The translations under genes were made by a program, and so were the position numbers. From the NCBI RefSeq assembly GCF_902652985.1, contig NC_047020.1, forward strand, positions 9,610,001 through 9,674,000: a stretch of 64,000 bases of DNA, read 5' to 3'. The stretch comes from Pecten maximus (lineage: Eukaryota). Below the pieces are notes generated by a model. That model was not told the origin of the DNA. It saw only the letters and a program-made list of their open reading frames with translations, and did not search any database. Below, one piece after another: positions 4,989-63,820 of this stretch (its first letter is position 1; each line of letters starts with the position of its first letter).

Positions 4989-6473
4989 ATGTCGAGTGGT
5001 AATGTATCAGGATTGGGCGCGCTATCTTCTGTGAGCGGGTCCTTCTACAGATGGCTTGAGGACGACGTAGTGGACAACATAGCAGGCGCAGCCATGTCGA
5101 TTATATTCTTGGTTGGGATGGTGCTTAATATCTTAGTTATTCGTGTACTCTCTTCAAACAATCACCAGACTATGACGAGTAAACCCATTTTTGTTCAGTT
5201 GATTATTATAGATTTTGTTTCGTATATATTTATAATTTTGCCTGGAAGTGTATCCGCGTTCAATGACTCTGTTATATTTCCGGATGGAGTATGTCTGATA
5301 AATGGACTGTGTGTGACGATATGTTGGCTTGGATCGTTCGCCTTCATGACTATCCTTTGCTGTGAAAGGACAATTAAACTATGGAAACCGGCAATCCACG
5401 AAAATGGTTTTGAAAAAAATCGACACGGTGTCATCATTGTAATTGCCGTGTGGTTAGTGTGTGTCGGTGTATCCGCACTTCCGCTGACCGGTTACGGAGA
5501 GGCAGACTACATCCCGCTCCAACAACGATGTGTTATCCACGACGATAACCATATCCACATGCACCTACTCTTTGTGTTTGGAATATACATCCCGTCTACC
5601 ATTGTATGCCTTTGTGGAATTTTCACATATACTCGCAAGCGACAAATTGTTTTGTCCTTGTCAAAATTGAATAAACAAGTCGAAAATATCAATATGAAAC
5701 TGACCAAGACAGCAGATGAAAATTCAGCTGCATCATCACCTAAACGGCATTCTTCTGAACGAAATGATTTAAGTGTGAGCGAAATAATTGAGGGGTCCAC
5801 ACAGGGTATTTCCCATACTGCTACAGAATCGGTACTAATTCAAGAGGGTAAATCCGTAACAAGCAGGGATTATAGAACTGTATCCGAGCCTATACACCAT
5901 ATGTCACATGATGACGCGTCTACTGACGTCACACCGGATAGAGAAGATGATGTTAGTAGTAAAGTAAGTCAACCAATGACACCCAGAACTGTAAATGACA
6001 CAAAAATAGAAATATTATCAAGTGGTATAAACAGAGATAAAACCAAACTATCAAAAGTCAAAGTGATGTTCAATGTTTACCAATCATCCGCAGAAGAAAG
6101 GGACATAACTCTAACCGTCAGTTACATTCTGATGTTTTTGGTGGTGTTGGGTTTGTGGCTGCCGTATGTGGTGCTGTTATACTTGGATAATGACGAGGGT
6201 ACTGTTTGGGGTGGCTGGTTCTCTCTCGTCGTGTTATTGTCCGACATATCTTATTGTATCAAGCCAGTTGTCTACCTTAGTCACAACCGGGTCCTAAAGA
6301 AGGCAGCTATGGCGTCATTTCCAGAGTCAGTGAGGAAACGGGCAGCGAAGACACAAGAAGCACTCAAGACAATCTCGAAGAAACTCGATAGTTTAGTTTT
6401 TATACGAATGCCGGATACCAAATCGTTAATAGACATAGAAAGGGACAGGGTACGCGTATCACCAACGGTTTAA
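4989..6473 (+). CDS. Intronless class A (rhodopsin-like) orphan GPCR, 494 aa
   Basis: Seven hydrophobic segments; TM1 Asn (VLNIL), TM2 LxxxD (QLIIIDF), TM3 Cys and ERT at the DRY position, TM4 Trp, ECL2 Cys, long ICL3, TM6 LWLPY, TM7 KPVVY. Confidence 0.9.
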   Translation: MSSGNVSGLGALSSVSGSFYRWLEDDVVDNIAGAAMSIIFLVGMVLNILVIRVLSSNNHQTMTSKPIFVQLIIIDFVSYIFIILPGSVSAFNDSVIFPDGVCLINGLCVTICWLGSFAFMTILCCERTIKLWKPAIHENGFEKNRHGVIIVIAVWLVCVGVSALPLTGYGEADYIPLQQRCVIHDDNHIHMHLLFVFGIYIPSTIVCLCGIFTYTRKRQIVLSLSKLNKQVENINMKLTKTADENSAASSPKRHSSERNDLSVSEIIEGSTQGISHTATESVLIQEGKSVTSRDYRTVSEPIHHMSHDDASTDVTPDREDDVSSKVSQPMTPRTVNDTKIEILSSGINRDKTKLSKVKVMFNVYQSSAEERDITLTVSYILMFLVVLGLWLPYVVLLYLDNDEGTVWGGWFSLVVLLSDISYCIKPVVYLSHNRVLKKAAMASFPESVRKRAAKTQEALKTISKKLDSLVFIRMPDTKSLIDIERDRVRVSPTV

Positions 6474-6907
6474 GGAGAATTCCGCTACAATATCAAAACA
6501 GGTTGAATATCGCATATCCTTAACAGTAAAGAACTTATCGAAACTATTGAGTATATGCCTCATCTGGTGATAAAGTGTTAATAACCTTGTGGCCAGTGCT
6601 TCATACACAGTCACAGTAAATACCTGTCCTGTACATTGTCTCCCAGAGCATGTGCCTTCTACAACAATGGAAAGTTTGAACGTTTAGTCACACTAAATAT
6701 CCAGTTTTCGAGGTTTATTGTTACCCTATATACCGATATGCATTCTTCCTAAAAGTGGTGCCGGTTCAGAACATAATTTGTATACATGTACTTTTTTTTT
6801 TTTTTTTTTTAAACAATATGTTATTGATTAACTGTGGAACTAATCCACCTCCTCTATTAGTCCTTAACATTTATTTAGGTCCATTTTGATGAATCTGTGT
6901 GCACAGT

Positions 6908-7258
6908 ACAAAGCTCAGAAGAGGGTATTGAAAGTTTGTGTTCAATATAACCCCTAGAAGAGGATGCTTCCACATAAGACGATAGTGAAATTGTTCTCAG
7001 TACAAACCCCAGAAGAGGGTAGTGAACGTGTACTTAGTACAAACCCCAGAAGAGGGTAGTGAACGTTTACTTAGTACAAACCCCAGAAGAGGGTAGTGAA
7101 CGTGTACTTAGTACATGTATAAACCCCAGAAGAGGGTAGTGAACGTGTACTTAGTACAAACCCCAGAAGAGGGTAGTGGATGTGCGCTCAGTACAAACCC
7201 CAGAAGAGGGAAGTGAACGTGTTCCAAGTACAAACCCCAGAAGAGGATAGTGAACGTG
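6908..7258. repeat. Minisatellite, ~37-bp unit (tacaaaccccagaagagggtagtgaacgtgtacttag)
   Basis: About 7 well-conserved copies from 7001, with degenerate copies upstream. Confidence 0.9.
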
Positions 7259-8745
7259 TGAATGTGTGCAACACTGTATCCATTTTGAAATCTCAATACA
7301 GAATACATAAACATTGAAATTCAAATGTGTGTATGATATCCATCAAATATACCTACTAAAGTGCAATTCAAACCCTACCACTTAAAGTTGGGTTAAAGAT
7401 TTCTGCAATTTAGAAATATAACTTGGATCTACCCAATGGATAATGGAACCATGGAAAAAATAATCGCAATTCATTCTCAAGTGAATTACTGTTTGTACAT
7501 ATTCTTTACGTTCTGAGAATGTTTTTATATACCTGTAGCTGTGTTGCTGTCATGTTCACACAAACTAAACTTGGTGAAAAGCCTTCGCAGATTAGATACA
7601 GACAGACAAAGGCATACTTCTCTTCTGCAGTCCTCTTTTATAGGTTTGTCACAAATTGACCTATTACTCTCGTTAACGATTCTAGCTTGTAATGGGTTAT
7701 GCTTATTCCTTTCTTTATATTCTCTATATCTTTTAGTTGGATTTAAAATAGAGGTAATAATTTAGGAATCTATATGCATGTAACGATTAATATGATATGT
7801 TTACAGAATAAAGAGAAATTCTCCAGGTAGTTTCTTGAAGACTGTTGGCCGAAACTGATGATTTACTCTGCCCTAAATCCGTACACAAAATTTTGCTATT
7901 ACATACTCAAAATATGTCACCCCGTAAAATACATATCATGTGCATTGTTGGGTCTCGTGCTGTCATTACCTCGTTTATTTTATTAACATTCAAAGACATT
8001 CATTTATCCCAGTGTTTTCAAGGTAATCTATGTGATAAGAAACCCTTATTCATACTGATGAGATATTCTATATTTTGTTAATTATTCGTTCATCGGTCGT
8101 AATTATAACACTCACAAACGTTGAAAGTGTGAGGTTAATGTTTCAATGCGCTATGGGTACTCACTGCGCTATTAACAATATGTATTGTAGCTGCATACAT
8201 TGTAGATAGTGTATACATGTATTTAGATATATCCGCGGCCTCTAAAGTGTTAAATAATACCATGAAAATTGGTATGTATTAAAATATGGAATCATTTTCT
8301 AGCATTTTTACTCGAAGGTCGTTGTTTTGGCTACTGAAACATATTAACTATTTTAGCTCTCTACCGAGTAATTCAAGTAAAAATTGACACCGCTGTATTG
8401 AAAAAAAATATCTGATACAATTAATGTCTAAACAAATTTGAAATATAAACCCAAACAAGAAGGCAAGAACTAGAACCCATTGGTTTCGCTGTAAAACAAG
8501 ATATGAAACTTCCTCAGTCAAAGTTGTTGACGTTTAAGTGTCTCAGTATTTATTACGTGAAGACCTTTCTATGTCAGCGTCACCTGTCTTGTTAACTTGT
8601 GGATTCTCACTGGATAAAATATATTACCAGGTGCTACTGGCACGAAAATCCGCAATAACTTTATTGTGCTTGTTAGAGACATAAATCATCGTACGGAAGC
8701 TAACACTATATATAGTATTGCAACAGTGTATTGATCTGACTTGAC

Positions 8746-49718: not shown

Positions 49719-50428
49719 AATACAAGACGCAGTATAATGTTATAGTCTAGTTATCTACAACCGGGAATATATATTAAATGAACATGACTATATCGATCGT
49801 CGACAGAACATGGACTACCATTCATTACATCGAGTATAGACACAAATGCTTCTAGCCTTAGACTCTATAACAATGTATAATGTCTTGTTTCCTACGTATT
49901 ACATTCACAATAAATGAGTGTCGCATGTGTTTTATCAGTTATAATATTTGATTTAATTACTCAAAGCAAAGTTATTTAAAAGACAGAAATAGTGGACAGG
50001 GAAAGATAAATTGATTTAGAATTGATGTTGCTTTGGACCTGAAGTTGACATCATGCTACCGGAGGTGGTAGTTATCTTACGATATTTTAAATGTTTGAAT
50101 TCAGGTATATTCTATAAGGTAGCTGGAATTCTATATGTCAAGAAACATGAATACTTGACCCTCACTTGTTTATGCATGTTCTAGTCCTTAGTTTACCAGT
50201 AACCCTTCGTTACCTTTGATAGGATTTTTTTCTCAGAACACGGGCGTCATTTCAAATATATACTACCTGGAAATGGATAGATTTAAATTCCACGCCGCAC
50301 TCCATGTGTATATAAAGCTACAATTCAAGGTTTTTCCGTGAATCGATCAATACGTGCCAAACTCTTCAAAAAACTTACACGCTGATCTTTAAAGGTAGAG
50401 TAATATTGGTAAATAACACAGGTGCATA

Positions 50429-50669
50429 TGTTATAGTCAGAAATTATGTTAATAATTATTTCTGGTGTACCCCTATATTTTTTGATTATGTGCAGCATTA
50501 AGCGTCTAAAGGGAGACAACTCGAATTTATTCACGGTACAATTATCGATCGGTTTTTGGTGATCACGTGACTTGCTCCTGACGCCATTAAAACATCTCGA
50601 AGAGTACATCTTGTGTCTCCTGTTTTTCAGGTCCTGGTATCTCCCCTCCCCTCCATACCTGGTGTAACA
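50429..50669 (+). repeat. Left LTR (5' LTR by PBS position)
   Basis: TG...CA ends; followed after 3 nt by TGGGGGCTTGTCCGGGAT. Confidence 0.95.
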
Positions 50670-50672
50670 TTT

Positions 50673-50690
50673 TGGGGGCTTGTCCGGGAT
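50673..50690 (+). promoter_or_regulatory. Primer-binding site, tRNA-Pro type (one mismatch)
   Basis: TGGGGGCTTGTCCGGGAT versus the canonical tRNA-Pro PBS TGGGGGCTCGTCCGGGAT. Confidence 0.85.
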
Positions 50691-53600
50691 TAAGTTGGGA
50701 GACTCCCTGTTTTAAAAGAGTTTCCTCATCTGAAGAATCCTCAGAAGTTAGATCTTTAGGTCTGGATTTCCTCTGCTTCTTGAGACGAGCACTGTGTGGT
50801 CTGTGTTCCTGGCGAATACCCTCAAGTGGTAGACTATTACACTGTAATAGAAGATTGCGGTGCAGGCGGCGAATGCGGCCTTTTCCATCCTCGCGACACA
50901 CATCATATACACTCGAATCATTAACACGTTTCCTAACAACATGAATGTGATCCTCCCAGAAGGATCGCAGCTTACCAGGTCCACCACGTTCACCTAAATT
51001 CTTCACCAAAACTCGATCTCCTGGTTCTAATGAAGCGCTGGTGTTTCTCGAATCGTGGTTCATTTTCCCTCTAGCAGCTGATCGATGTGCGTTCTTGGTC
51101 GCAATGCTGTATGCTTCCTTCATACGATCTTTCCACTTACTGGCATAACCAGAGTATGATTCTTTACTCTCACCTTCAGGGTGTGCATGTTGGAACAGTA
51201 GATCAACTGGCAACCGAGGGTGCCTACCGAACAACAAGTAGAATGGTGAAAAGTTCGTAGCGTCTGATCTTGTACAATTGTATGCGTGCACGACCCCATT
51301 CAAATGCTGTTTCCAGTCCGCTTTACCTTCTTTAGTCAGCGTCCTCAACATCCCGAGTAAGGTCCTATTAAAACGCTCCACCTGTCCGTTTCCTTGTGGG
51401 TGGTAAGGTGTGGTGCGCGAGTGACCCACTCCCGACAGCTTCTCGAGATTTTTGAACAGTCTGTTTTCAAATTCGCGCCCCTGGTCATGATGTAAACGAC
51501 AGAGATATCCAAACCGCGGAAAGAAGTCATTGAATAACTTTTCAGCGGCTGTTTTACTACTCTTATTAGTCGTTGCATAGGCCTGCGCGAATCTTGTATA
51601 GTGGTCCATTACCACAAGGATATATTCGTATCCTCCTTTACAACGTTCAAGATGAAGGAAGTCAATAGATACCAATTCAAAGGGAAATGAAGTCTCTATC
51701 GGTGTCAACGGAGCATCACGGCGTTGGTGTGGCCGCTTGTCTTTCATGCACAAACAAGATGCTCTCACAAACTGGTCGACATCAGCCCCCATGTGTGGCC
51801 AATAAAATCTGGCCCTTGCCAAGTCTAGTACCCGGTCAGCACCTAAATGTCCCATTTTAACATGTAACTCTTCCAACACTCTTGACCGGAATCTGTGAGG
51901 CAAAACTAACTGAATTCGTTGGCCATCGGTGCCTGCTGAGCGTCTTTTCAGGAGGTTGTTCTCGTCCACATATAACTTAGGCCATTCCCTCAAAAGTGCC
52001 TTAGTGTCACGCCTCAATTGACGAATTGTGTTCTGTGTGGGCTTTTTCTCCTCCTTCAGAAAACTAAACACAGGTCCAATGTCAGCGTCCTCCCTCTGAG
52101 CGGATTGGAGTTGATCAAGGGAAAATGGAATAATTGCTGAGCTTCCAAGTTTGCCGTTCTCAATGTCTAATGATTTCTCACTAAGGGAGGCAACCCAAAC
52201 ATTTTCTCCCTCTGACCGTGCTGTTGCTGAACATAGAGTGGTTTTCAAAGAATCTGGATCCACGACCTCAGTACAATACGACATTACACGAGAAATATCC
52301 AATGACATGCGGCTAAAACCATCAGCTGCCTGATTCTGGTGTCCTGGTTTGCAATAGATTTTAAATCTAAAGTCGGCCAGTTCAGAAACCCATCTTAACC
52401 GTGTGGCGTCTAGTTTTCTCGATGTGAAAATATACTGTAACGGGTTGTTATCGGAGTATACCGAGAACTCGCGTGCATAGTATAGATAGTCTCTGAAACG
52501 CTCCGCGACCACCCACTTTAAGGCCAAAAACTCCAGCTTCCCTGAGTGGAGGTGGTGATTCTTTTCAGCTGGTGTCAATGTGCGTGAGGCATAGGCGACA
52601 GGAGAAAGACGATGTTTTGAATTCTCTTGATATAAGATCGCTCCCAACCCTTCCTGTGAGGCATCGACATGAACGATAAACGGTTTTTCAAAGTCTGGAT
52701 AAATCATGACTTGACCCTCGGGTTTAATCAAGAGATCAATGAGTTCACTCAATAGTTTATGATGTCTGGGTGTCCATGTTACCTTCACACTCGACGCAAG
52801 TTGTCCACCTTTACCAACCTTTTCCCGCTTAGTATGACTATGACCTTTTGGATTGTTTCCCTCAGCCTCGCCAGAGTTGTCTTGTAGTAGATCGTATAGA
52901 GGTTTTGCTTTGCGCAAGAAATCTGGTATATAGCGACGATAGTACCCTATAAACCCTAACACTTGCCTCACTTCACCAACAGTACCTGGGTTTTTCTCTT
53001 TTAGGCTACGCACCGCCTCAGTGTCAGCCGGATCCATCTTATACCCATTCGGGGTAACAAGGTGACCTAAATACCGTACTTCACGCTTAAACAACTCACA
53101 TTTGCGCGGTTTGAGCTTAATACCATTCTTCTTGAGTCTCTGTAGTACTGCACGTATGTGTTCTATATGTTCCTCAAACGATTTACTGTAGACCAAAATA
53201 TCGTCAAGGTAGGGTAGACAGCATTGGTCTCTCAACCCATCTAGGCACTCATTCATAAACCGCTGGAATGTCCCTGGTGCTCCAGCCAATCCAAATGGAA
53301 TACGGTTCCACTCATACAATCCCCAGGGGGTAATAAATGCTGTATAGGGTCTGCATTCTTCACGAATATATCCCTGATGATAAGCTTTACCCTGGTCTAA
53401 TAATGTAAACCACTGACTACCACCGAGACTGTCGAGTGCATCCTGAATCCTAGGAAGGGGGTGACGATCATCAATGGTCTTCAGATTTAAACGACGATAG
53501 TCGCAGCAGTCTCAAACTTTGATCTTTCTTCCTAACACAGACAACAGGACTCGAGTAGGATGACCTCGACTTTCTTATCCAACCCTTAGCTAATAAATCA

Positions 53601-54916
53601 TGCAAGTAGTCCTTGACCTCCTGGTATAAGGGTTTGGGAATAAATGTATATGACTTCTGTACAGGGATATTGTCAACAAGTTTTATGTCCATTTCTAATC
53701 CTGGTGCATTGCCAATATCATCATCGGATCTCGAGAAAGCCTCCTTCTCCTCATGTAGTAGTTGCCTCACCGCTTTTCTCTGTTCTTCAGAAAGTTCTGA
53801 ACTAGACAAATCTACTGGTTCCCACATATCATCTTCATGAGGTTTTGACTGATTGCTTAGCGACATGTCAGTAGTGTCCTCGACCCTGTCAGTAATGTCA
53901 ACTGGTAAGTGAACAACTGATGCCACGGTCTGTAAAAGACCAATCTCCGTATGCCTGGGAATCATTATGTTATTTTGTGTATGATTTGCGACCACAACCT
54001 TCACCGTACTTGTTTTACCAGTTTTAACCTTAACCAATGTCTCTGTTAATGATAGGCCATATGTTTCGTTCACAGTGGGTACAAAGAGTGCATTCAAGGG
54101 AAACTCCTGGTTATCACCTCTCACAACTGCTCTTACTGTTTTTGAACTGTTTCCTTGAACAACAATGTTACTCCTACCAGTTCTTGCCACTCCTACATCT
54201 TCATTGTGACCTCGGCGAATCAAGGTACACAGGGAGACTAGATCGTCAGCCTTTAAGTCTGGAAATGCCGCTTGTGGCAACTGCGTGTCGGTAGTTTTTA
54301 TCAACTGTTCAATCACATTATAACCCAGGATTGGGTGTTCCATTGAAGTGTCTGTGACAATAAAAGGCACTACTAGTGGCGTCTCTGATGTGTGCAGTAG
54401 AACCTCAACCTGGACCCATCCACGGAATGGTACTGTGGTGCCATTAGCAGAAAATATGGACAAGTCTGGTACCAGTTCACTGACTGGCTGAACAGGAATG
54501 CTCGGTAAGTTCTTGCGCAGCCATTTGTAGTTTAGAAGTGACACTTGGGCACCTGTGTCCCAAAGAACACCAGTTTTTACCTTGTTTAGATCTGCTTGAA
54601 CAATACACTTTGTCCCAACTATTTTGGTCATCTTAATCTTTAACTTAGGTGGTAGACTCAACACACTGCCTTTTAATTCATGAACGGTCACTTTCCTTGA
54701 CACTCCTGTCTCTAACTGTTGAACTTTCTGACATAACGCTTTGTGTGTAGGTCATGCTTTCGCACGACATGCTTGACAACAGTACATAGCTGAATTACAG
54801 CCTTTACATCGTAATGTTGGATTCGTCTTCCCACATTCTCCACAACAAATACCTGGCTGGGACGTTTGCTCCTTGGGTTCTTCTTGTCCCTCTAGAGGAA
54901 CCCTCATTCGTTTCCC
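50691..54916 (-). CDS. pol: Gypsy pol, disrupted: MYND-like finger - aspartic protease - RT - RNase H - integrase
   Basis: LWDTGAQVS (protease), YLDD (RT), VDAS...LEFLAL...SDNNPL (RNase H), H-H-C-C plus SIDF/HHDQG/VERFN (integrase). Lesions: TGA at 54752-54754, frameshift near 53505, and no native stop (the frame runs into the left LTR to 50587). Confidence 0.92.
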
Positions 54917-56109
54917 TGCTTTTTATCGACTTTTGCGCGACAACCCCGTCTGAAGTGCTCCAAACTACCGCAACGGAAGCAATGCTTACAATCAGTGTTC
55001 CCCGACTGTTGACAGGCGGTACAACCCCAGCGTTGTGGACGCGACTGTGGACGTGACTGTGAACTTGCCTGTAGAGCTTCGCGAAGGACAGCGACCTCGG
55101 CTTTGAGTTCCTTTAATTCAACGGAGAAAGTACCCTCCTTGGGCTCACGTTTTTGTTTACTCGAGCTCTGACTCACTTTGTTCACTGAACATGAATTGTT
55201 TTTCTTTCCCAATTTCGAATTTCTTTCCGTTTCTCTGACGGCAATGTCATTCATTTCCTTTAGAAGTATCTCGTCGCTTTTGGTCCTTTTTAAGATGCTC
55301 TCAAATTCTATCCGAACTGACTCACTTCTTAGGCCTGTGAGAACGGAACGTTCGAATAATGCCTGGACCAGGGCTGTATCATAACGGGGTGACGTAGGGT
55401 CACTGTCTTTTGATGCGAAGATGATGTTCTGTTTTAAATTTAGTGTTCTCATTAAGAATTCAGAGCAATCCTCTGAGGGCATCTGTGCTGCTCTATTGAG
55501 TTCGTTGTATAATTCTGTTGCTGATTTTTCCCGATAATGGGCTCTGAGTAGACTTCTTAATGTAGACAAAGAAAGTTCATCTCTACCTTCAAGATAGCTA
55601 CGTAAACCGGAATTAGCTGGTACCGCTTTCAGCACTGCGTCGACTATCTCATAGTCTGGGTAGCCTTTCTTTTCCCCCATCTGCATCTGTCTCACTAATC
55701 CGACATAGGGTATTCCATTTTTCGCATCTACTTGCCCGGTGATCTTAAATTCACGACGATTGAGAGTTATTGGACCTTTCTCCTTCTCTGTTCCTGCTGA
55801 CATGTTTCCAGGCTCAGGTTCGGTCTTTACCTTAACCTCTGGTTCAGTCTTTACCTTTGGAGATGCTGTTACATGGCCCCCTGCCTCAAGGGTTACATCA
55901 GTGACTATTTGGGCACTAAATCCCTTGTCATCGGCTGTCAATTTCTGTTTTTCGAACCATTTCTGTATAATACCGATAACGTTCACTCTATTCTCCTTGT
56001 TTTCCTCACTAATATCAATGCCATTGGTACTAACAACCTCCAGCAAGTCCTCCAGCGAGGCCTGGTATATCCTCCCTATTGTGAAAAGAAAATGCTCTTC
56101 AAACTCCAT
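54904..56109 (-). CDS. gag: Gypsy gag, 401 aa, with C-terminal CCHC zinc knuckle
   Basis: The ORF starts 1 nt after a PBS; CFRCGSLEHFRRGC knuckle; ends at a G GGA AAC slippery site overlapping pol. Confidence 0.9.
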   Translation of the reverse strand: MEFEEHFLFTIGRIYQASLEDLLEVVSTNGIDISEENKENRVNVIGIIQKWFEKQKLTADDKGFSAQIVTDVTLEAGGHVTASPKVKTEPEVKVKTEPEPGNMSAGTEKEKGPITLNRREFKITGQVDAKNGIPYVGLVRQMQMGEKKGYPDYEIVDAVLKAVPANSGLRSYLEGRDELSLSTLRSLLRAHYREKSATELYNELNRAAQMPSEDCSEFLMRTLNLKQNIIFASKDSDPTSPRYDTALVQALFERSVLTGLRSESVRIEFESILKRTKSDEILLKEMNDIAVRETERNSKLGKKNNSCSVNKVSQSSSKQKREPKEGTFSVELKELKAEVAVLREALQASSQSRPQSRPQRWGCTACQQSGNTDCKHCFRCGSLEHFRRGCRAKVDKKQGNE

Positions 56110-56110
56110 G

Positions 56111-56173
56111 ATCCCGGACGAGCCCCCAAAATGTTACACCAGGTATGGAGGGGAGGGGAGATACCAGGACCTG
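56111..56173 (-). repeat. Inverted copy of LTR 3' end (42 bp) plus a perfect tRNA-Pro PBS
   Basis: Reverse complement of 50628-50690 with one mismatch; lies immediately upstream of the gag ATG. Confidence 0.92.
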
Positions 56174-56304
56174 TTTTTGGTGATCACGTGACTTGCTCCT
56201 GACGCCATTAAAACATCTCGAAGAGTACATCTTGTGTCTCCTGTTTTTCAGGTAAAGTATATTTTGGGTAAATGTCGGGATGACATTACTTTTTGGGGGG
56301 AGAG

Positions 56305-56545
56305 TGTTATAGTCAGAAATTATGTTAATAATTATTTCTGGTGTACCCCTATATTTTTTTATTATGTGCAGCATTAAGCGTCTAAAGGGAGACAACTCGA
56401 ATTTATTCACGGTACAATTATCGATCGGTTTTTGGTGATCACGTGACTTGCTCCTGACGCCATTAAAACATCTCGAAGAGTACATCTTGTGTTTCCTGTT
56501 TTTCAGGTCCTGGTATCTCCCCTCCCCTCCATACCTGGTGTAACA
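56305..56545 (+). repeat. Right LTR (3' LTR by PPT position)
   Basis: Preceded by the polypurine tract ggggggagag (56295-56304); near-identical to the left LTR. Confidence 0.95.
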
Positions 56546-57364
56546 CATACACGACTGGCCTCGTAACAAATTATCCACAAAGCTTTCTACAAATAACCAA
56601 CGTAGTGTATATTTACTTCAACCACAAATTAGTTTTGTCAAGTAGGGTTACCTGTTCATTTTCTTTATGTATGTCTATATTGATATCGTCTAACCGTTTC
56701 GGAGAGTCGAGACGTTCAAATGACAAAACACGACCATTGGTTAAATGTACAGAACTTGGACATTCACTTCGTCGTGAACTGGTTGGTAAAATTAAACATA
56801 TGTTCTAAGAATATACAGGTGTGAAATAAAGGAACGATATTGATCTGAAACATAGAATAACTTAAAGAATAACGATAATAAAAACATAACATACACATGG
56901 GGAGTTCCATAAATCAATGGAGATCCGCAATTACATGTATATTGTTTCGCGTTGTCTTTAGTAAGGGAACAACCAACCAATTGAAAAGTCCGATTGATTT
57001 ATTTTCTTCAAAAGTTCAGGTCATAATAATTAATAGGAAATAATTGCAGATTTTTGAGAATTTATACTTCGAAATTCACCTGGCCATTTTGAAAATGGAT
57101 AACCTGGGAAAAGTTTGAGCTGAAGGACCCCCTCTAAGTGTAGGAGTAACTGCTCCTGGTGTGTAGCTGATAGTAATAGTAAAAGCTGTAGTCGGATTTT
57201 TTGACATGCACTTACTTAATTATCTTTAAATTCCATATTTTCTATACCGACTTCCTTCTTGGGAAATTCCTCACCTCTAGTCTGATTATAAATGATATTG
57301 CTGTTATTTGTAAGTCGGTTTTCTTCCTACTCATAACTGATTTGTAAACCTGCAAGTTAAGATA

Positions 57365-58515
57365 TACATATATACACATGTGTTTGTCCCTCTGAGAGGA
57401 CTATACACACATATACATGTGTGTATCCCTCTAACAGTACTATACACACATAATACATGTGTTTGTCCCTCTGACAGGACTATACACATATATATATATA
57501 CATATATACATGTGTGTCCCTCTGACAGGACTATATACACATAATACATGTGTTTGTCCCTCTGACAGGACTATACACATATATACATGTGTTTGTCCCT
57601 CTGACACTATACACATATATCCATTTGTGTGTCACTCCGATAGGACTATACATATATATACATGTGTGTGTCCCTCAGACAGGACTATATACATGAGTGT
57701 GTCCCTCAGACAGGACTATATAAATGAGTACTCCCTCTGACAGGACTATATACATGTGTGTGTTCCTCTGACAGGACTACATACATGAGTGTGTCCCTCA
57801 GACAGGACTATATACATGAGTGTGTCCCTCTGACAGGACTATATACATGTGTGTGTTCCTCTGACAGGACTATATACATGTGTGTGTCCCTCTGACAGGA
57901 CTATATACATGTGTGTGTCCCTCTGACAGGACTATATACATGTGTGTGTCCCTCTGACAGGACTATATACATGTGTGTGTCCCTCTGACAGGACTATATA
58001 CATGTGTGTGTCCCTCAGACAGGACTATATACCTGTGTGTGTCCCTCTGACAGGACTATATACATGTGTGTGTCCCTCTGACAGGACTATATACATGTGT
58101 GTGTCCCTCAGACAGGACTATATACCTGTGTGTGTCCCTCTGACAGGACTGTACACATATCTACATGTGTGTGTCCCTCAAGGGGCCGCGGTGGCGGAGT
58201 GGTTAAGGTGTCCCGACACTTTAACACTAGCCCTCCACCTCTGGGTTGCGAGTTCGAAACCTACGCGGGGCAGTTGCCAGGTACTGACCGTAGGCCGGTG
58301 GTTTTTCTCCGGGTACTCAGTTTTTCCTCCACCTTTGAAACCTGGCACGTCCTTAGATGACCCTGGCTGTTAATAGGACGTTAAACAAAAACAAACAAAA
58401 GTGTGTCCCTCTGACAGGACTATATACATGGGTGTGTACCTCTGACAGGACTATATACATGAGTAGTCCTCCTGACAGGACTATATGCATGGGTGTGTAC
58501 CTCTGACAAGAATAT
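57365..58515. repeat. Minisatellite, ~31-bp unit (tgtgtgtgtccctctgacaggactatataca), interrupted by a SINE
   Basis: Directly visible; the array resumes after 58400. Confidence 0.95.
58182..58400 (+). mobile_element. Full-length tRNA-derived SINE (V-domain-like)
   Basis: ggggccgcggtggcggagtggttaagg (box A), gagttcgaaacc (box B), ggtggtttttctccgggtactcagtttttcctcc (V-like core), aaac tail; gtgtgtccctc duplicated on both sides. Confidence 0.92.
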
Positions 58516-60286: not shown

Positions 60287-63200
60287 AAACATATTTTATT
60301 GACATACAATAATGACAAAGGGATTAGTCAGCAATGTTAACCAACTTATAAACGACTTATCCCATAATAATAACAAAATAATAAACAATAACATAGTCAC
60401 ATGATGGGATTTACAAATATTCAGAANNNNNNNNNNNNNNNNNNNNNNNNNNNNNNNNNNNNNNNNNNNNNNNNNNNNNNNNNNNNNNNNNNNNNNNNNN
60501 NNNNNNNNNNNNNNNNNNNNNNNNNNNNNNNNNNNNNNNNNNNNNNNNNNNNNNNNNNTCCTGACCTTCTCAAGAGGTTTTGCACAACTTTGGCGATTTT
60601 TGTATTTTAAGTTGAGGAGATATTCGTGTCACCATTGCAAAGTATATTTACATTAACAGGACCGTACCAGGTTAAATCAGCAATAAAAGTTCCTCTTAAG
60701 TTGTTGTACAGGGGACGGTTAAGGAAAAAATGATGGGAATCTTCACAGGGATGTCCACATTGACAAGCAGGTGAATCAACGAGATTGGCTCTAAAAAGAT
60801 CATAGCTTAGTGCACTTGCTCGATTTCTTATTCTGTTGTGTAGAATATTTAGTTTTCGAGGACCATAACTGATAAAATGCTTGTCATATATACTGTTTAC
60901 TGTCATCGATTTTTTTAGATTAGATTTGAAGGAACTTAAAGTAGGCGAGTTTCTGATAGTGTTATGTAAGTCATTCCAAAGTTTTGAAGTAGAAGGAAAG
61001 AAAGAGTTTTTTGATAGTTGTAGACGAAAGTGTTGTGCCCTAAATAAATTTGCATTCCGTCAATTATAAGGAGCTGTGTTGTCAATATACATTGCTAGTA
61101 GGTCGATAAGAAAAGTAGGTACCAGATTATTGACTATAGAATAGAATAAGGAGAATTTCCGAGCATATCTTCTCTTCCAGATATAAGAACTCTGTTTTTG
61201 TGAATATGGGTAGCCCTGTGGCTGTTCTTGCGGTCTCTAGATTTATTTTTTCTAATAACAATGAGTTTGTTGTACCGCAGTTGTCACATACTTCACATGC
61301 ATATTCAAGTAATGGTCGTATATAGGTAAGGTACATTTTTTTTCTAATGTGTTCCTGTTTAAGATAAGTTTTAATTTTATATATTTAGTTACTTTATTGA
61401 CTATAGATTCTACATGTACGTTCAACTAACAATCATCAGAAGAGAATGACTCCTAGGTGTTTATGGTGGTTTGTTATTTTAATTGGGATATTGTCGAATG
61501 TAAAGGACGGAACAAAAGGAAGTTATCTAGTTGATATTACGAGGGCCTCGGTTTTATTAGGATTAAAGGACATAAGCCATTCATTGGACCAAATTTCAAG
61601 TTTTAATAAGTCGCGTTTAGCCTCCGTCTCAATAAGGTTGAGGTCATATGACGCGTAGGATAGAGATGTATCGTCAGCGAAAAGCCTAGATAGAGATGAA
61701 AGATTACAGGAAATATCATTTATGTATAGTAGAAAGAAAAGTGGACCAAGAACTGACCCTTAAGGGGACACCATCATTTATAGGCTTAAGAGAGGAAAGT
61801 GAATCATTGATAAATACAGCTTGTTTTCTTTTTGAAAGATAACTAGCCACCCAACGAAGAAGAGGTCCAGAGATACTATAATTGTCGAGTTTATGTAAGA
61901 GGCCTTTCTGCCACACGCGGTCAAATGCCTTAGAAAAATCACAAAAAAAAAAAATAAGATAGAATGTTCATAATTTTCTAAGGAAGAAATGATTGAATGA
62001 TATATTTCAATAAGTTGATGTGTTGTGGAGTGATTTGGTAGGAATCCAGACTGATACTTATAGATAAGGTCGTTTTCGATTAAAAAATTGTAAATATGCT
62101 TATATACTACACGCTCAAAAAGTTTACCTATACAACTTAGCAGCGACATAGGTCTGTAATTAGAGACAATGCTTGCATCATTGGCCTTAAATATAGGCAT
62201 TACATGAGCAATTTTCCAGCTCTCAGGAAATATACAAGATGACAAAGAATAATTGAATATAAAAGAAAGTGGTATAGAAATTTCACTTGAGAGTAATTTT
62301 AGCATTCTGTGACTGATACCGTCAGGACTTGACGCCTTTTTAACATCTAGATTTTTTATAATGTCTTCAACTTCACTGGAAACGCTATGTATTTCTGATA
62401 AAATAGAATCTGTCCTCTTTTCAAAAAAGGGTAATTCTTTATCTATGACATTTTCTGACAGAGTACACACAGAGCTAAAATAAGTATTCAACAGTTCACA
62501 TTTCCTATTGTTGTCATATATAATTTCATTCGTAGAACTATCAAGTAGAGGAGATATATCTGGGGTTTTTTTTTTTACCTCTGAGAAGGTTTCCCAGAAG
62601 TTTCCAATACACTTTTGGGTTGTTATTACTATTGTCTATAACTGTGTTAATGTTTTCATAAAATATCTCTTTAGCCCTCTTTATCATATTATTTACTTTA
62701 CTCCTCATATGCTTGTATTTATTCTTATTGGACTCTGAATTATTATTAAACATTATTTTTTTTAAGTCCGTCTCTTTTCCTTATATTACGTCTTACCATT
62801 CCATTCATCCATGGTTTATCACTGTCGCGTACTAATATTTCTTTTGATGGTATACATTTATCAATAGCATCATGGAATTTTTCAGTAAAGAAATTACACA
62901 TTTCATTAACATTTGAAAGATTGGTAAAAGTGTCAAACCAGGGAATACTGTTAATCATTCCTTTTAACTTATAAATATCGGTTTGATCATATTGTTTGAT
63001 TTTAACAGGACTATTTATAATTGCGAAAACGGCATCATGGTCACCTATACATGTAGTTCGCTCAATGTCAATAACATCGGAAAAAATTACATGTGTAGTA
63101 TCACTTACAATGATAGGGTCAAGAAGGGTTGAGAAGGTATCGGTTTGTCTAGTGGGTTCGGTAATGACATTGGTTAAATTATAATTGGACAAAATATCAC

Positions 63201-63820
63201 ATAGATCACCTCTGACGGGTTAAAGAAAACCAATATTTAAATCACCTGTAATTAATAAATTGGGCGTTTCTTCGAGTGCTGTTTCAATGGAATGTCGTAA
63301 ATGATGCCACAAACCAGCGCCATTATAAGAGGGTGGTCTGTATACGTTACAGATTAGATACAAAGTATTACGTAATTTGATTTGAGACCATATCATTTCA
63401 TCATGACTAAATTCGAGATCAATTCTCCGTTTAGCTACAAGTGTTTCAGAAAAGTATAGGGCAACACCTCCCCCAAACATGTTACGATCTTTGCGAAAGG
63501 GTTCCGAAAAACCATCGATTTGTATTGCAGAGTTGGTGATAGAGTTGTCAAGATGGGTCTCAGTTATACATGCTATATCAATATCGTCTATCAAAGAGCT
63601 CAAATATTGAACCTTGTTACGCAAACTTCGAATGTTTAGATGGAGCAAACAAAGGACACTGGAAACCGAACTTTCAGAATTGGGTCCCGGGTTTGGGTGG
63701 ATATCCTCAGCTATTAATAAAAATTATCAAGGTTGCGTTAAATGGATGCTGGATGTAGTGGGACAACTGCAGTAATAAAATATAGATCCTATGAAGACAG
63801 TTGAGATTGAAGATAACTCT
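60287..63820 (-). mobile_element. Decayed 5'-truncated APE-type non-LTR retrotransposon (CR1/L2-like ORF2: endonuclease + RT + C-terminal Cys motif)
   Basis: Endonuclease motifs HLNIRSL, ITETHL, NVYRPP, GDLNI (63220-63648); RT motifs SPDGI, WKIAHVMPIFK, NYRPMSLLS, QSGF (61778-62491); IRPLLEYACEV; CQCGHPCEDSHHFF; AATAAA near the 3' end; many frameshifts; contains an N gap. Confidence 0.92.
60427..60558. other. Assembly gap (132 N)
   Basis: Run of N. Confidence 1.

What the first reader, a model, noticed from the sequence alone, without database searches (positions are those of the whole stretch)
50429..56545. Gypsy element whose gag-pol is flipped relative to its own LTRs, between two U5+PBS inverted repeats
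Seen: the LTRs, PBS (50673-50690), PPT (56295-56304) and CATA TSD define one integrated element in + orientation, yet gag-pol (50691-56110) is on the - strand. Gag is preceded by its own perfect tRNA-Pro PBS and 42 bp of LTR end. Segments 50628-50690 and 56111-56173 form 63-bp inverted repeats, so one recombination between them would restore a normal LTR-PBS-gag-pol order. Established: LTR elements normally carry one PBS and code on the LTR-sense strand. Inference: this is either a real inversion (possibly polymorphic or invertible), in which the 5' LTR would drive an antisense gag-pol transcript that could feed piRNA/siRNA silencing while keeping all cis signals for mobilisation in trans, or an assembly flip caused by the inverted repeats.
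Basis: partly seen in the sequence, partly recalled or inferred. Interest (0 to 1): 0.85.

Follow-up and report, generated by a model that had tools for sequence, protein, structure and literature searches.

The report
Scrambled retrotransposon copy from faulty reverse transcription
This is one young, non-functional copy of a scallop Ty3/gypsy retrotransposon whose interior lies backwards between intact LTRs, most likely because reverse transcriptase switched templates at its natural stop points before the DNA was integrated; it is a neat molecular fossil, not a new kind of element or switch.

Summary
There are 241-bp LTRs (99% identical), a CATA target duplication, a PBS, a PPT, minus-strand gag-pol and 63-nt inverted U5+PBS arms.

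New facts:
- Another individual's contigs carry the empty site with a single CATA. The unit therefore integrated as one piece and is polymorphic.
- Three sister copies are canonical, and the three odd junctions occur nowhere else in the assembly.
- J1 lies at the last base of the 18-nt PBS, with 5-nt microhomology (GGGAT) to antisense pol.
- J2 lies at LTR position 200/201.
- J3 joins a third LTR fragment (positions 125-204 plus 9 nt found only in a 1.27-kb LTR form) to the PPT region through 8-nt microhomology.
- The single mismatch between the arms separates two native tRNA-Pro isodecoders, and each arm is a perfect 18-nt complement of one of them.
- The copy lacks the last ~158 pol codons and the 3' UTR (~795 bp). 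It also has a private stop and a private 2-nt deletion.

Best reading (~0.65): a dead-on-arrival product of aberrant strand transfers during reverse transcription, like inversion-bearing defective HIV proviruses.

A flip between the arms, real or by the assembler, would not remove the anomaly. The orientation itself was not verified by reads here. There is no evidence for a switch, trans-mobilisation or piRNA role. Interest is low to moderate.

The parts
50425..50428 (.). Left target-site duplication, CATA
   Evidence: The empty allele in run X4 reads flank...CATA then directly window 56550 onward (loose end at 50428).
50429..50669 (+). 5' LTR, short 241-bp form (TG...CA)
   Evidence: family D1. 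Compared with LTRs of sister copies.
50673..50690 (+). PBS 1 (core CTTG). Perfect 18-nt complement of the tRNA-Pro isodecoder ending ...ACAAGCCC+CCA.
   Evidence: tRNA-Pro(UGG/AGG) genes with this 3' end lie in arrays on C3, C7 and C14; the UGG copies carry the compensating acceptor-stem change.
50686..50690 (.). Junction J1. The 5-nt microhomology GGGAT is shared by the PBS 3' end and antisense pol; the crossover ends exactly at the 18th PBS base.
   Evidence: the window is aligned there with C15, C18 and C8, which read ...GCTTTGGGAT followed by TAAGTTGGG. J1 is unique in the assembly.
50691..56110 (-). Internal region in reverse orientation. gag runs 56109->54904. A MYND finger (~54847->54731) carries a private stop near 54752. 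A DTG protease motif follows. RT-RNaseH-integrase runs 53319->50691. There is a private 2-nt deletion after 53506. pol is cut ~158 codons before its normal stop.
   Evidence: The region is ~99% identical to the C18, C8 and C15 copies.
56111..56128 (-). PBS 2 (core CTCG). Perfect complement of the common tRNA-Pro 3' end ...ACGAGCCC+CCA; lies 1 nt upstream of the gag ATG.
56132..56173 (-). Inverted copy of LTR positions 200-241 (the U5 end). Together with PBS 2 it forms the second 63-nt arm.
   Evidence: I1, I2.
56173..56174 (.). Junction J2: inverted LTR position 200/201 joined to direct LTR position 124/125, with 1 nt (G) shared. Position 201 is the A of a TCAGG initiator-like motif (inference only).
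   Evidence: Direct reading. Unique in the assembly.
56174..56253 (+). Fragment F: a third, direct copy of LTR positions 125-204
   Evidence: family D2.
56254..56262 (+). Junction J3: AAAGTATAT. These are the first 9 nt of the 959-bp segment X that follows LTR position 204 only in the long LTR form. Eight of them (AAGTATAT) are also the start of the PPT-proximal region.
   Evidence: X occurs only inside long LTRs. J3 is unique in the assembly.
56255..56304 (+). PPT-proximal 50 nt, with the PPT at 56295-56304
   Evidence: Identical context upstream of the 3' LTR in C15 and C18.
56305..56545 (+). 3' LTR, short form. It differs from the 5' LTR at two bases (LTR positions 56 and 189).
56546..56549 (.). 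Right target-site duplication, CATA

Best explanation
This is a single, young, still-polymorphic insertion of a Ty3/gypsy-type LTR retrotransposon that was already scrambled when integrase inserted it. During one round of reverse transcription, in a particle holding more than one template, DNA synthesis switched templates three times.

[quoted passage not shown] It was then extended back through pol, gag, PBS and U5.

J2: that synthesis ended at LTR position 200/201, which I infer to be the 5' end of the genomic RNA. It then jumped to a minus-strand copy of a long-form LTR.

J3: after nine bases of segment X, synthesis jumped through AAGTATAT to the PPT region and finished a normal 3' LTR.

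The ends were normal, so integrase inserted the molecule with a 4-bp CATA duplication. The copy cannot replicate on its own. It lacks the pol tail and 3' UTR, carries a stop and a frameshift, and its coding strand faces the wrong way.

Shown: the anatomy, microhomologies, uniqueness, empty site and tRNA matches. Inferred: the order of switches, the RNA 5' end at position 201, and that the assembled orientation is the true one.
For: Integrated as one unit: intact TG...CA ends and a CATA duplication. The empty site with a single CATA is present in an independent sample, X4. In the likely source sample X1 a contig runs from the left flank 28 nt into the LTR, which is short of the tool's 31-letter rule for bridging.

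The sister copies on C18, C8 and C15 are canonical. J1, J2 and J3 occur only here.

J1 falls in the last 5 nt of the 18-nt PBS, with GGGAT microhomology to antisense pol. J3 has 8-9 nt of microhomology.

Fragment F carries the first 9 nt of X. Neither LTR of this copy contains X, so a second, long-LTR template was copied.

The two PBS copies differ at exactly the base that separates two native tRNA-Pro isodecoders, and each is a perfect 18-nt match to one of them. This fits independent templating, by tRNA primer and by RNA.

Sister copies show the same tendency to lose X from the 5' LTR (the plus-strand strong-stop product) while the 3' LTR keeps it, where that LTR is intact (C15 and C18; C8's is cut at position 167).

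Aberrant first- and second-strand transfers with junctions at the R 5' end or at the PBS/tRNA, and integrated proviruses with internal inversions, are documented for HIV-1 (PMC12657518, PMC9278108).

The assembly statistics equal those of a PacBio 66x long-read assembly (PMC7191990), so reads averaging about 10 kb (75.8 Gb in 7.25 million reads) should span the 6.1-kb unit.
Against: No read or contig shown bridges J1, J2 or J3.

The transcription start at LTR position 201 is not mapped. The nearest TATA-like box (ATTAAAA) lies 43 nt upstream, further than usual. An alternative, R = 139-204, is not excluded.

The PBS difference is a C/T at a CpG and could be a later mutation; C15 shows such decay.

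How the complementary strand of such a product is completed is not explained in detail.

Microhomology junctions are also typical of replication-based DNA rearrangements.
Confidence: 0.65

Rival explanations
1. Orientation artefact. The true allele has gag-pol in LTR sense, followed by an inverted U5+PBS stub (a copied minus-strand strong-stop DNA plus tRNA), fragment F, the PPT and the LTR. The assembler, or a later in vivo crossover between the 63-nt arms, flipped the 5.4-kb interior. The element would still be an aberrant reverse-transcription product.
For: The junction sequences are the same in both states, so nothing seen here distinguishes them. The sense-oriented state needs only an aberrant minus strand (63 nt copied from strong-stop DNA plus tRNA) followed by normal completion, which is mechanistically simpler. 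The interior is a 4-copy, 99%-identical repeat. No bridging contig is listed.
Against: The assembly matches a PacBio 66x, wtdbg2, Arrow-polished and curated build. Reads of about 10 kb span the whole unit, and long-read assemblers do not normally flip a segment between 63-bp repeats. Homologous inversion across 63 bp in a young polymorphic allele would be rare. A short 3' LTR fits plus-strand synthesis better, since the sister 3' LTRs and the solo LTRs that reach that far (5 of 5; C8's is cut short) keep X.
Confidence: 0.12
2. Rearrangement after integration. A normal plus-oriented copy inserted here and was later scrambled at the DNA level, either by replication template switching (FoSTeS/MMBIR) or by breakage and end joining, or by a nested second copy followed by deletions.
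For: Microhomologies of 5, 1 and 8 nt are typical of MMBIR. All segments except X(1-9) could be copied from a single resident copy with a long 3' LTR.
Against: It needs 3-4 switches plus loss of X from the 3' LTR plus a point change in one PBS, all inside an allele young enough that the empty site still segregates. It leaves as coincidence that J1 sits at the exact PBS end (about 5 of ~6,000 positions) and that the PBS difference equals a tRNA isodecoder difference. The nested-insertion version is not collinear, because F plus X lies upstream of the PPT.
Confidence: 0.12
3. Functional reading. A heritable, possibly invertible unit in which the 5' LTR drives antisense gag-pol RNA that feeds piRNA/siRNA silencing, and which can be mobilised in trans.
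For: The LTR, PBS and PPT are intact and face an antisense interior. Low-depth contigs of the interior occur in a run guessed to be RNA (X7).
Against: It is a singleton with no second copy carrying these junctions. No recombinase is present, and only one orientation is on record. The X7 contigs are strand-less and explainable by three sense copies. The insertion is absent from at least one other individual, so it is not fixed. Any packaging signal in gag would be inverted.
Confidence: 0.03

Closest known systems
Defective HIV-1 proviruses with internal inversions or aberrant strand-transfer junctions (PMC9278108, PMC12657518)
   Same: The DNA is integrated with usable ends but its interior was rearranged in one round of reverse transcription. 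Junctions lie at strong-stop landmarks (the R 5' end; PBS/tRNA read-in) or at short homologies. LTRs can be asymmetric through deletions made in strong-stop synthesis.
   Different: This is an invertebrate Ty3/gypsy retrotransposon primed by tRNA-Pro. Nearly the whole coding region (5.4 kb) is inverted and bounded by a duplicated, inverted U5+PBS. It is germline-inherited and polymorphic rather than somatic.
Canonical copies of the same family (G000 C18:32.53 Mb, C8:0.83 Mb, C15:33.20 Mb)
   Same: ~99% identical gag-pol, the same LTR, the same tRNA-Pro PBS, PPT and pol architecture (MYND finger, protease motif, RT, RNase H, integrase, acidic tail).
   Different: They code on the LTR-sense strand, keep the pol tail and ~795-bp 3' part, and have no second PBS. 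Where the 3' LTR is intact (C15, C18) it is the 1.27-kb form. Each has its own deletions.
Inversions flanked by inverted duplications from staggered breaks (Drosophila-type model; recalled from memory, not checked here)
   Same: An inverted segment bounded by short inverted duplications of the breakpoint sequence.
   Different: Only one breakpoint is duplicated here. The arms differ at a tRNA-diagnostic base. An extra LTR fragment from another template and a ~795-bp deletion accompany the inversion.
DIRS-like retroelements with inverted terminal repeats
   Same: Repeats and coding region in unusual relative orientation.
   Different: This copy has direct LTRs, a DDE integrase (rve) and a 4-bp target duplication. 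It has no tyrosine recombinase and is not a family-wide architecture.

Membership tests
Ty3/gypsy (Metaviridae-type) LTR retrotransposon | Direct LTRs ending TG...CA, flanked by a short target-site duplication | tested here: met
   (241-nt LTRs, CATA on both sides); empty site with one CATA in run X4.
Ty3/gypsy (Metaviridae-type) LTR retrotransposon | PBS complementary to a host tRNA 3' end next to the 5' LTR; PPT next to the 3' LTR | tested here: met
   Both PBS copies match native tRNA-Pro genes over the 15 encoded bases, or 18 with the added CCA. The PPT GGGGGGAGAG abuts the 3' LTR.
Ty3/gypsy (Metaviridae-type) LTR retrotransposon | pol order protease - RT - RNase H - integrase | tested here: met
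   Pfam RVT_1, RT_RNaseH, Integrase_H2C2 and rve in that order; DTG motif upstream. Clade placement within Ty3/gypsy was not tested.
Ty3/gypsy (Metaviridae-type) LTR retrotransposon | Coding strand is the LTR-sense strand, with one PBS | tested here: not met
   In this copy gag-pol is antisense to the LTRs and there are two PBS copies. The feature is met in the three sister copies. The family is a member; this copy is an aberrant derivative.
Reverse-transcription-generated defective provirus (aberrant strand transfer) | Breakpoints at strong-stop termini and/or short homologies | tested here: met
   J1 is at the 18th PBS base with 5-nt homology, and J3 has 8-nt homology. J2 at LTR 200/201 is only inferred to be the RNA 5' end (inconclusive).
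Reverse-transcription-generated defective provirus (aberrant strand transfer) | The rearranged form is the form that integrated (no canonical allele at the site) | not testable with these tools
   Only empty (X4) and filled (X1) alleles were glimpsed. Population long-read genotyping is needed.
Invertible DNA switch | Both orientations present in a population of molecules, and a recombinase acting on the inverted repeats | tested here: inconclusive
   No site-specific recombinase is encoded. Orientation could not be read from short-read contigs.
Autointegration (suicidal) inversion product | Inversion breakpoints at the LTR termini joined to an internal target with its own short duplication; circular product | tested here: not met
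   The breakpoints are at the PBS end and LTR position 200, not at LTR positions 1 or 241. The molecule has free LTR ends joined to host DNA.
DIRS-like elements | Tyrosine recombinase, inverted or split repeats, no target-site duplication | tested here: not met
   The integrase is of rve type, the LTRs are direct, and there is a 4-bp duplication.

The most novel reading that the evidence does not exclude
The scrambled copy is more than a corpse. Its intact 5' LTR would transcribe 5.4 kb of antisense gag-pol and so act as a newly born, still-polymorphic trigger of piRNA/siRNA silencing against its own young family. Alternatively, the 63-nt arms would let the interior flip in vivo between sense and antisense states.
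Probability: 0.04. Interest if true: 0.65.

Novelty: new member of a known kind. Interest (0 to 1): 0.3.

Why it matters
It is an unusually legible natural record of reverse-transcription errors in an invertebrate LTR retrotransposon. One breakpoint sits on the strong-stop end of the PBS. A second may mark the RNA 5' end. A third records a stall at the start of an LTR insert. The two PBS copies appear to record two different tRNA-Pro primers or templates.

It also warns annotators that LTR/PBS/PPT/TSD-based callers can report a 'complete' element whose interior is reversed.

It does not reveal a new class of element, a switch or a demonstrated silencing source.

Tried and rejected
1. Reads across the junctions. 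The single read-laying run used short-read contigs and listed only part of them. It gave the empty-site allele but nothing bridging J1-J3, so it neither supports nor refutes the orientation.

2. Other copies with the same junctions. None were found, so trans-mobilisation has no support.

3. Deaminase-type strand bias as a marker of which strand was made first. Private substitutions of the window copy are G>A 7 versus C>T 4 on the plus strand, which is no usable asymmetry, and the other copies are similar. I dropped this.

4. Homology of segment X to other parts of the element, which would have explained J3 as homology rather than microhomology. None was found.

5. LTR differences as evidence for two templates. 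Position 56 G/T is also polymorphic among other copies, but it sits at the end of a T-run where recurrent errors are likely. Not decisive.

6. Rejected on anatomy: autointegration, a staggered-break inversion, nested insertion plus deletions, and DIRS-like architecture.

7. Literature search for an LTR-retrotransposon precedent with an inverted interior. No direct case was found in the held library; HIV provirus papers are the nearest.

8. Earlier scan notes on this genome. Nothing bears on this structure except the MYND note.
Full report
OBSERVATION

- Two 241-nt direct repeats lie at 50429-50669 and 56305-56545. They are 99% identical and have TG...CA ends.
- CATA lies on both outer sides, at 50425-50428 and 56546-56549.
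- An 18-nt tRNA-Pro PBS lies at 50673-50690, and a PPT (GGGGGGAGAG) at 56295-56304.
- A 63-nt inverted repeat has arms at 50628-50690 and 56111-56173, 98% complementary.

The long ORFs between the arms are on the minus strand. They carry RVT_1, RNase H, the integrase zinc-binding domain and the rve core. Upstream of these are a MYND finger and a DTG protease motif. gag starts one base after the second PBS.

(a) A third partial LTR copy in direct orientation lies at 56174-56253 (LTR positions 125-204). It sits between the inverted arm and the PPT region.

(b) The pol frame has no stop of its own and reads through the junction at 50691 into the PBS and LTR. In sister copies pol continues for about 158 more codons, an acidic tail, followed by a 3' UTR. 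About 795 bp are missing here.

(c) This copy also has a private stop inside the MYND finger near 54752 and a private 2-nt deletion after 53506.

THE FAMILY

The window is C6:9,610,001-9,674,000 of a 918,306,378-bp, 3,983-scaffold assembly. These figures are identical to those of the published king scallop assembly. That assembly was built from 66x PacBio reads with wtdbg2, polished with Arrow and freebayes, and curated (PMC7191990).

The genome holds three more copies with an interior, on C18, C8 and C15. They are ~99% identical to this one. In all three the LTRs have the same sense as gag-pol.

The four copies form a star. Each has 12-23 private substitutions (about 0.3-0.4%) and its own deletions, so each is damaged in its own way.

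The family has two LTR forms. One is the 241-bp form. The other is ~1.27 kb and carries a 959-bp AT-rich segment X after position 204, followed by a repeat of positions 139-241.
- X occurs only inside such LTRs, at five loci, and resembles nothing else in the element.
- In C15 and C18 the 3' LTR is long while the 5' LTR has lost all or most of X. C18 uses a different deletion end-point. C8 also has a short 5' LTR, but its 3' LTR is cut at position 167, so its form is unknown.
- A 73%-related element on C13 has short LTRs.

THE UNIT INTEGRATED AS ONE PIECE AND IS POLYMORPHIC

In run X4, from a different sample and study, a contig follows the left flank to 50428 and then continues with the letters of window 56550 onward. 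This is the empty site with a single CATA.

In X1, probably the source animal, a 767-nt contig runs from the flank 28 nt into the LTR. That is slightly under the tool's 31-letter rule for bridging, so I treat it as suggestive of the filled allele.

THE THREE JUNCTIONS

All three are unique in the assembly.

J1 (50690/50691). The PBS ends ...CCGGGAT. Canonical antisense pol reads ...GCTTTGGGAT followed by TAAGTTGGG. [quoted passage not shown]

J2 (56173/56174). Inverted LTR position 200/201 meets direct LTR position 124/125, with one shared G. Position 201 is the A of a TCAGG initiator-like motif.

J3 (56254-56262). Fragment F continues for nine bases (AAAGTATAT) exactly as a long LTR continues into X. 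It then switches, through the shared AAGTATAT, to the 50 nt that precede the 3' LTR in canonical copies. Neither LTR of this copy contains X, so fragment F was copied from another, long-LTR template.

THE ARMS ARE NOT SIMPLE COPIES OF EACH OTHER

Their only mismatch is CTTG (arm 1) against CTCG (arm 2) in the PBS.

The genome encodes both tRNA-Pro types. The common one ends ...ACGAGCCC. A multi-copy UGG isodecoder ends ...ACAAGCCC, with a compensating change in the 5' acceptor strand (one AGG gene also ends this way, without that change).

Each arm is thus a perfect 18-nt complement of one native tRNA-Pro. This fits independent templating during reverse transcription: one PBS copied from a tRNA primer, the other from an RNA or a second primer. 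The caveat is that the difference is a CpG transition. C15 shows CpG decay in its PBS, so this evidence is moderate.

MECHANISM

Most likely (about 0.65), this is a dead-on-arrival product of aberrant strand transfers.

Read along the assembled plus strand:
1. LTR plus PBS is a plus-strand strong-stop DNA.
2. Its GGGAT end mis-paired with ATCCC in pol of a sense-strand template.
3. It was extended back through pol, gag, PBS and U5 to a template end at LTR position 201, which I infer to be the RNA cap site.
4. The chain then moved to a minus-strand copy of a long LTR at position 125, stalled nine bases into X, and jumped by AAGTATAT to the PPT region.
5. It completed a short LTR.

That both LTRs here lack X fits the family's habit of losing X in plus-strand strong-stop synthesis.

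An equally lawful alternative builds the opposite orientation. In it, a minus strand switches at J3, copies 63 nt of a strong-stop DNA with its tRNA (J2 to J1), and resumes in pol. The junction sequences are identical in both states. The order of events is therefore inferred, not shown.

Aberrant first- and second-strand transfers with junctions at the R 5' end or with tRNA read-in, LTR asymmetry from strong-stop errors, and integrated proviruses with inversions are documented for HIV-1 (PMC12657518, PMC9278108).

RIVALS

Assembler flip, or in vivo crossover between the arms (0.12). This is not excluded, because the only reads call returned short-read contigs with truncated tables and no listed contig bridges J1-J3. 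Reads averaging about 10 kb in a 66x PacBio assembly make a flip unlikely. A flip would not remove the inverted U5+PBS, fragment F or the deletion.

DNA-level rearrangement after integration (0.12). This needs several switches, a deletion of X, a point change and two positional coincidences, all within an allele young enough that the empty site still segregates.

Functional switch or piRNA source (0.03). This has no support. The copy is a singleton, no recombinase is encoded, the insertion is not fixed, and the only RNA-like contigs are strand-less and explainable by the sense copies.

SURROUNDINGS

The flanks carry no recognisable gene. A decayed LINE (endonuclease plus RT) lies at 61.7-63.7 kb on the minus strand, and a short 40-nt tandem repeat lies at 57376-57497.

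VERDICT

It is a new example of a known kind of event.

Noticed in passing
window 54731-54847 (-); L033:2458-7173:- residues 27-64: The pol polyprotein of this family starts with a MYND-type zinc finger (Pfam zf-MYND, E = 8.6e-8 in the C8 copy). In the window copy the finger is interrupted by a private stop near 54752. A MYND finger fused to a retrotransposon pol is unusual.
   Followed up: partly
L032:1930-3195 (C15), also C18, C7 and two loci on C17: LTR dimorphism. The 241-bp form contrasts with a ~1.27-kb form holding a 959-bp AT-rich segment X bracketed by a 66-bp direct repeat (LTR 139-204). In C15 and C18 the 5' LTR is short or partly deleted while the 3' LTR is long, which suggests recurrent loss of X during plus-strand strong-stop synthesis. 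The origin of X is unknown. The 73%-related C13 element has short LTRs.
   Followed up: partly
L039, L043, L045, L047, L049 (arrays on C3, C7, C14): A multi-copy tRNA-Pro(UGG) isodecoder has a compensated acceptor-stem pair (GGCTTGT...ACAAGCC instead of GGCTCGT...ACGAGCC). PBS variants among copies of this retrotransposon family track the two tRNA types.
   Followed up: partly
L037 about 5200-8700 (C13:1.5377-1.5412 Mb): The related C13 element contains a long internal tandem array of ~157-bp units (84-93% identical), a satellite-like expansion inside a retrotransposon.
   Followed up: no
window 61778-63648 (-): Decayed non-LTR retrotransposon: ORF fragments with Exo_endo_phos (E = 1.7e-11) and a weak RVT_1 match.
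   Followed up: no
window 57376-57497: Three tandem ~40-nt units (77-93% identical) about 830 bp downstream of the element.
   Followed up: no
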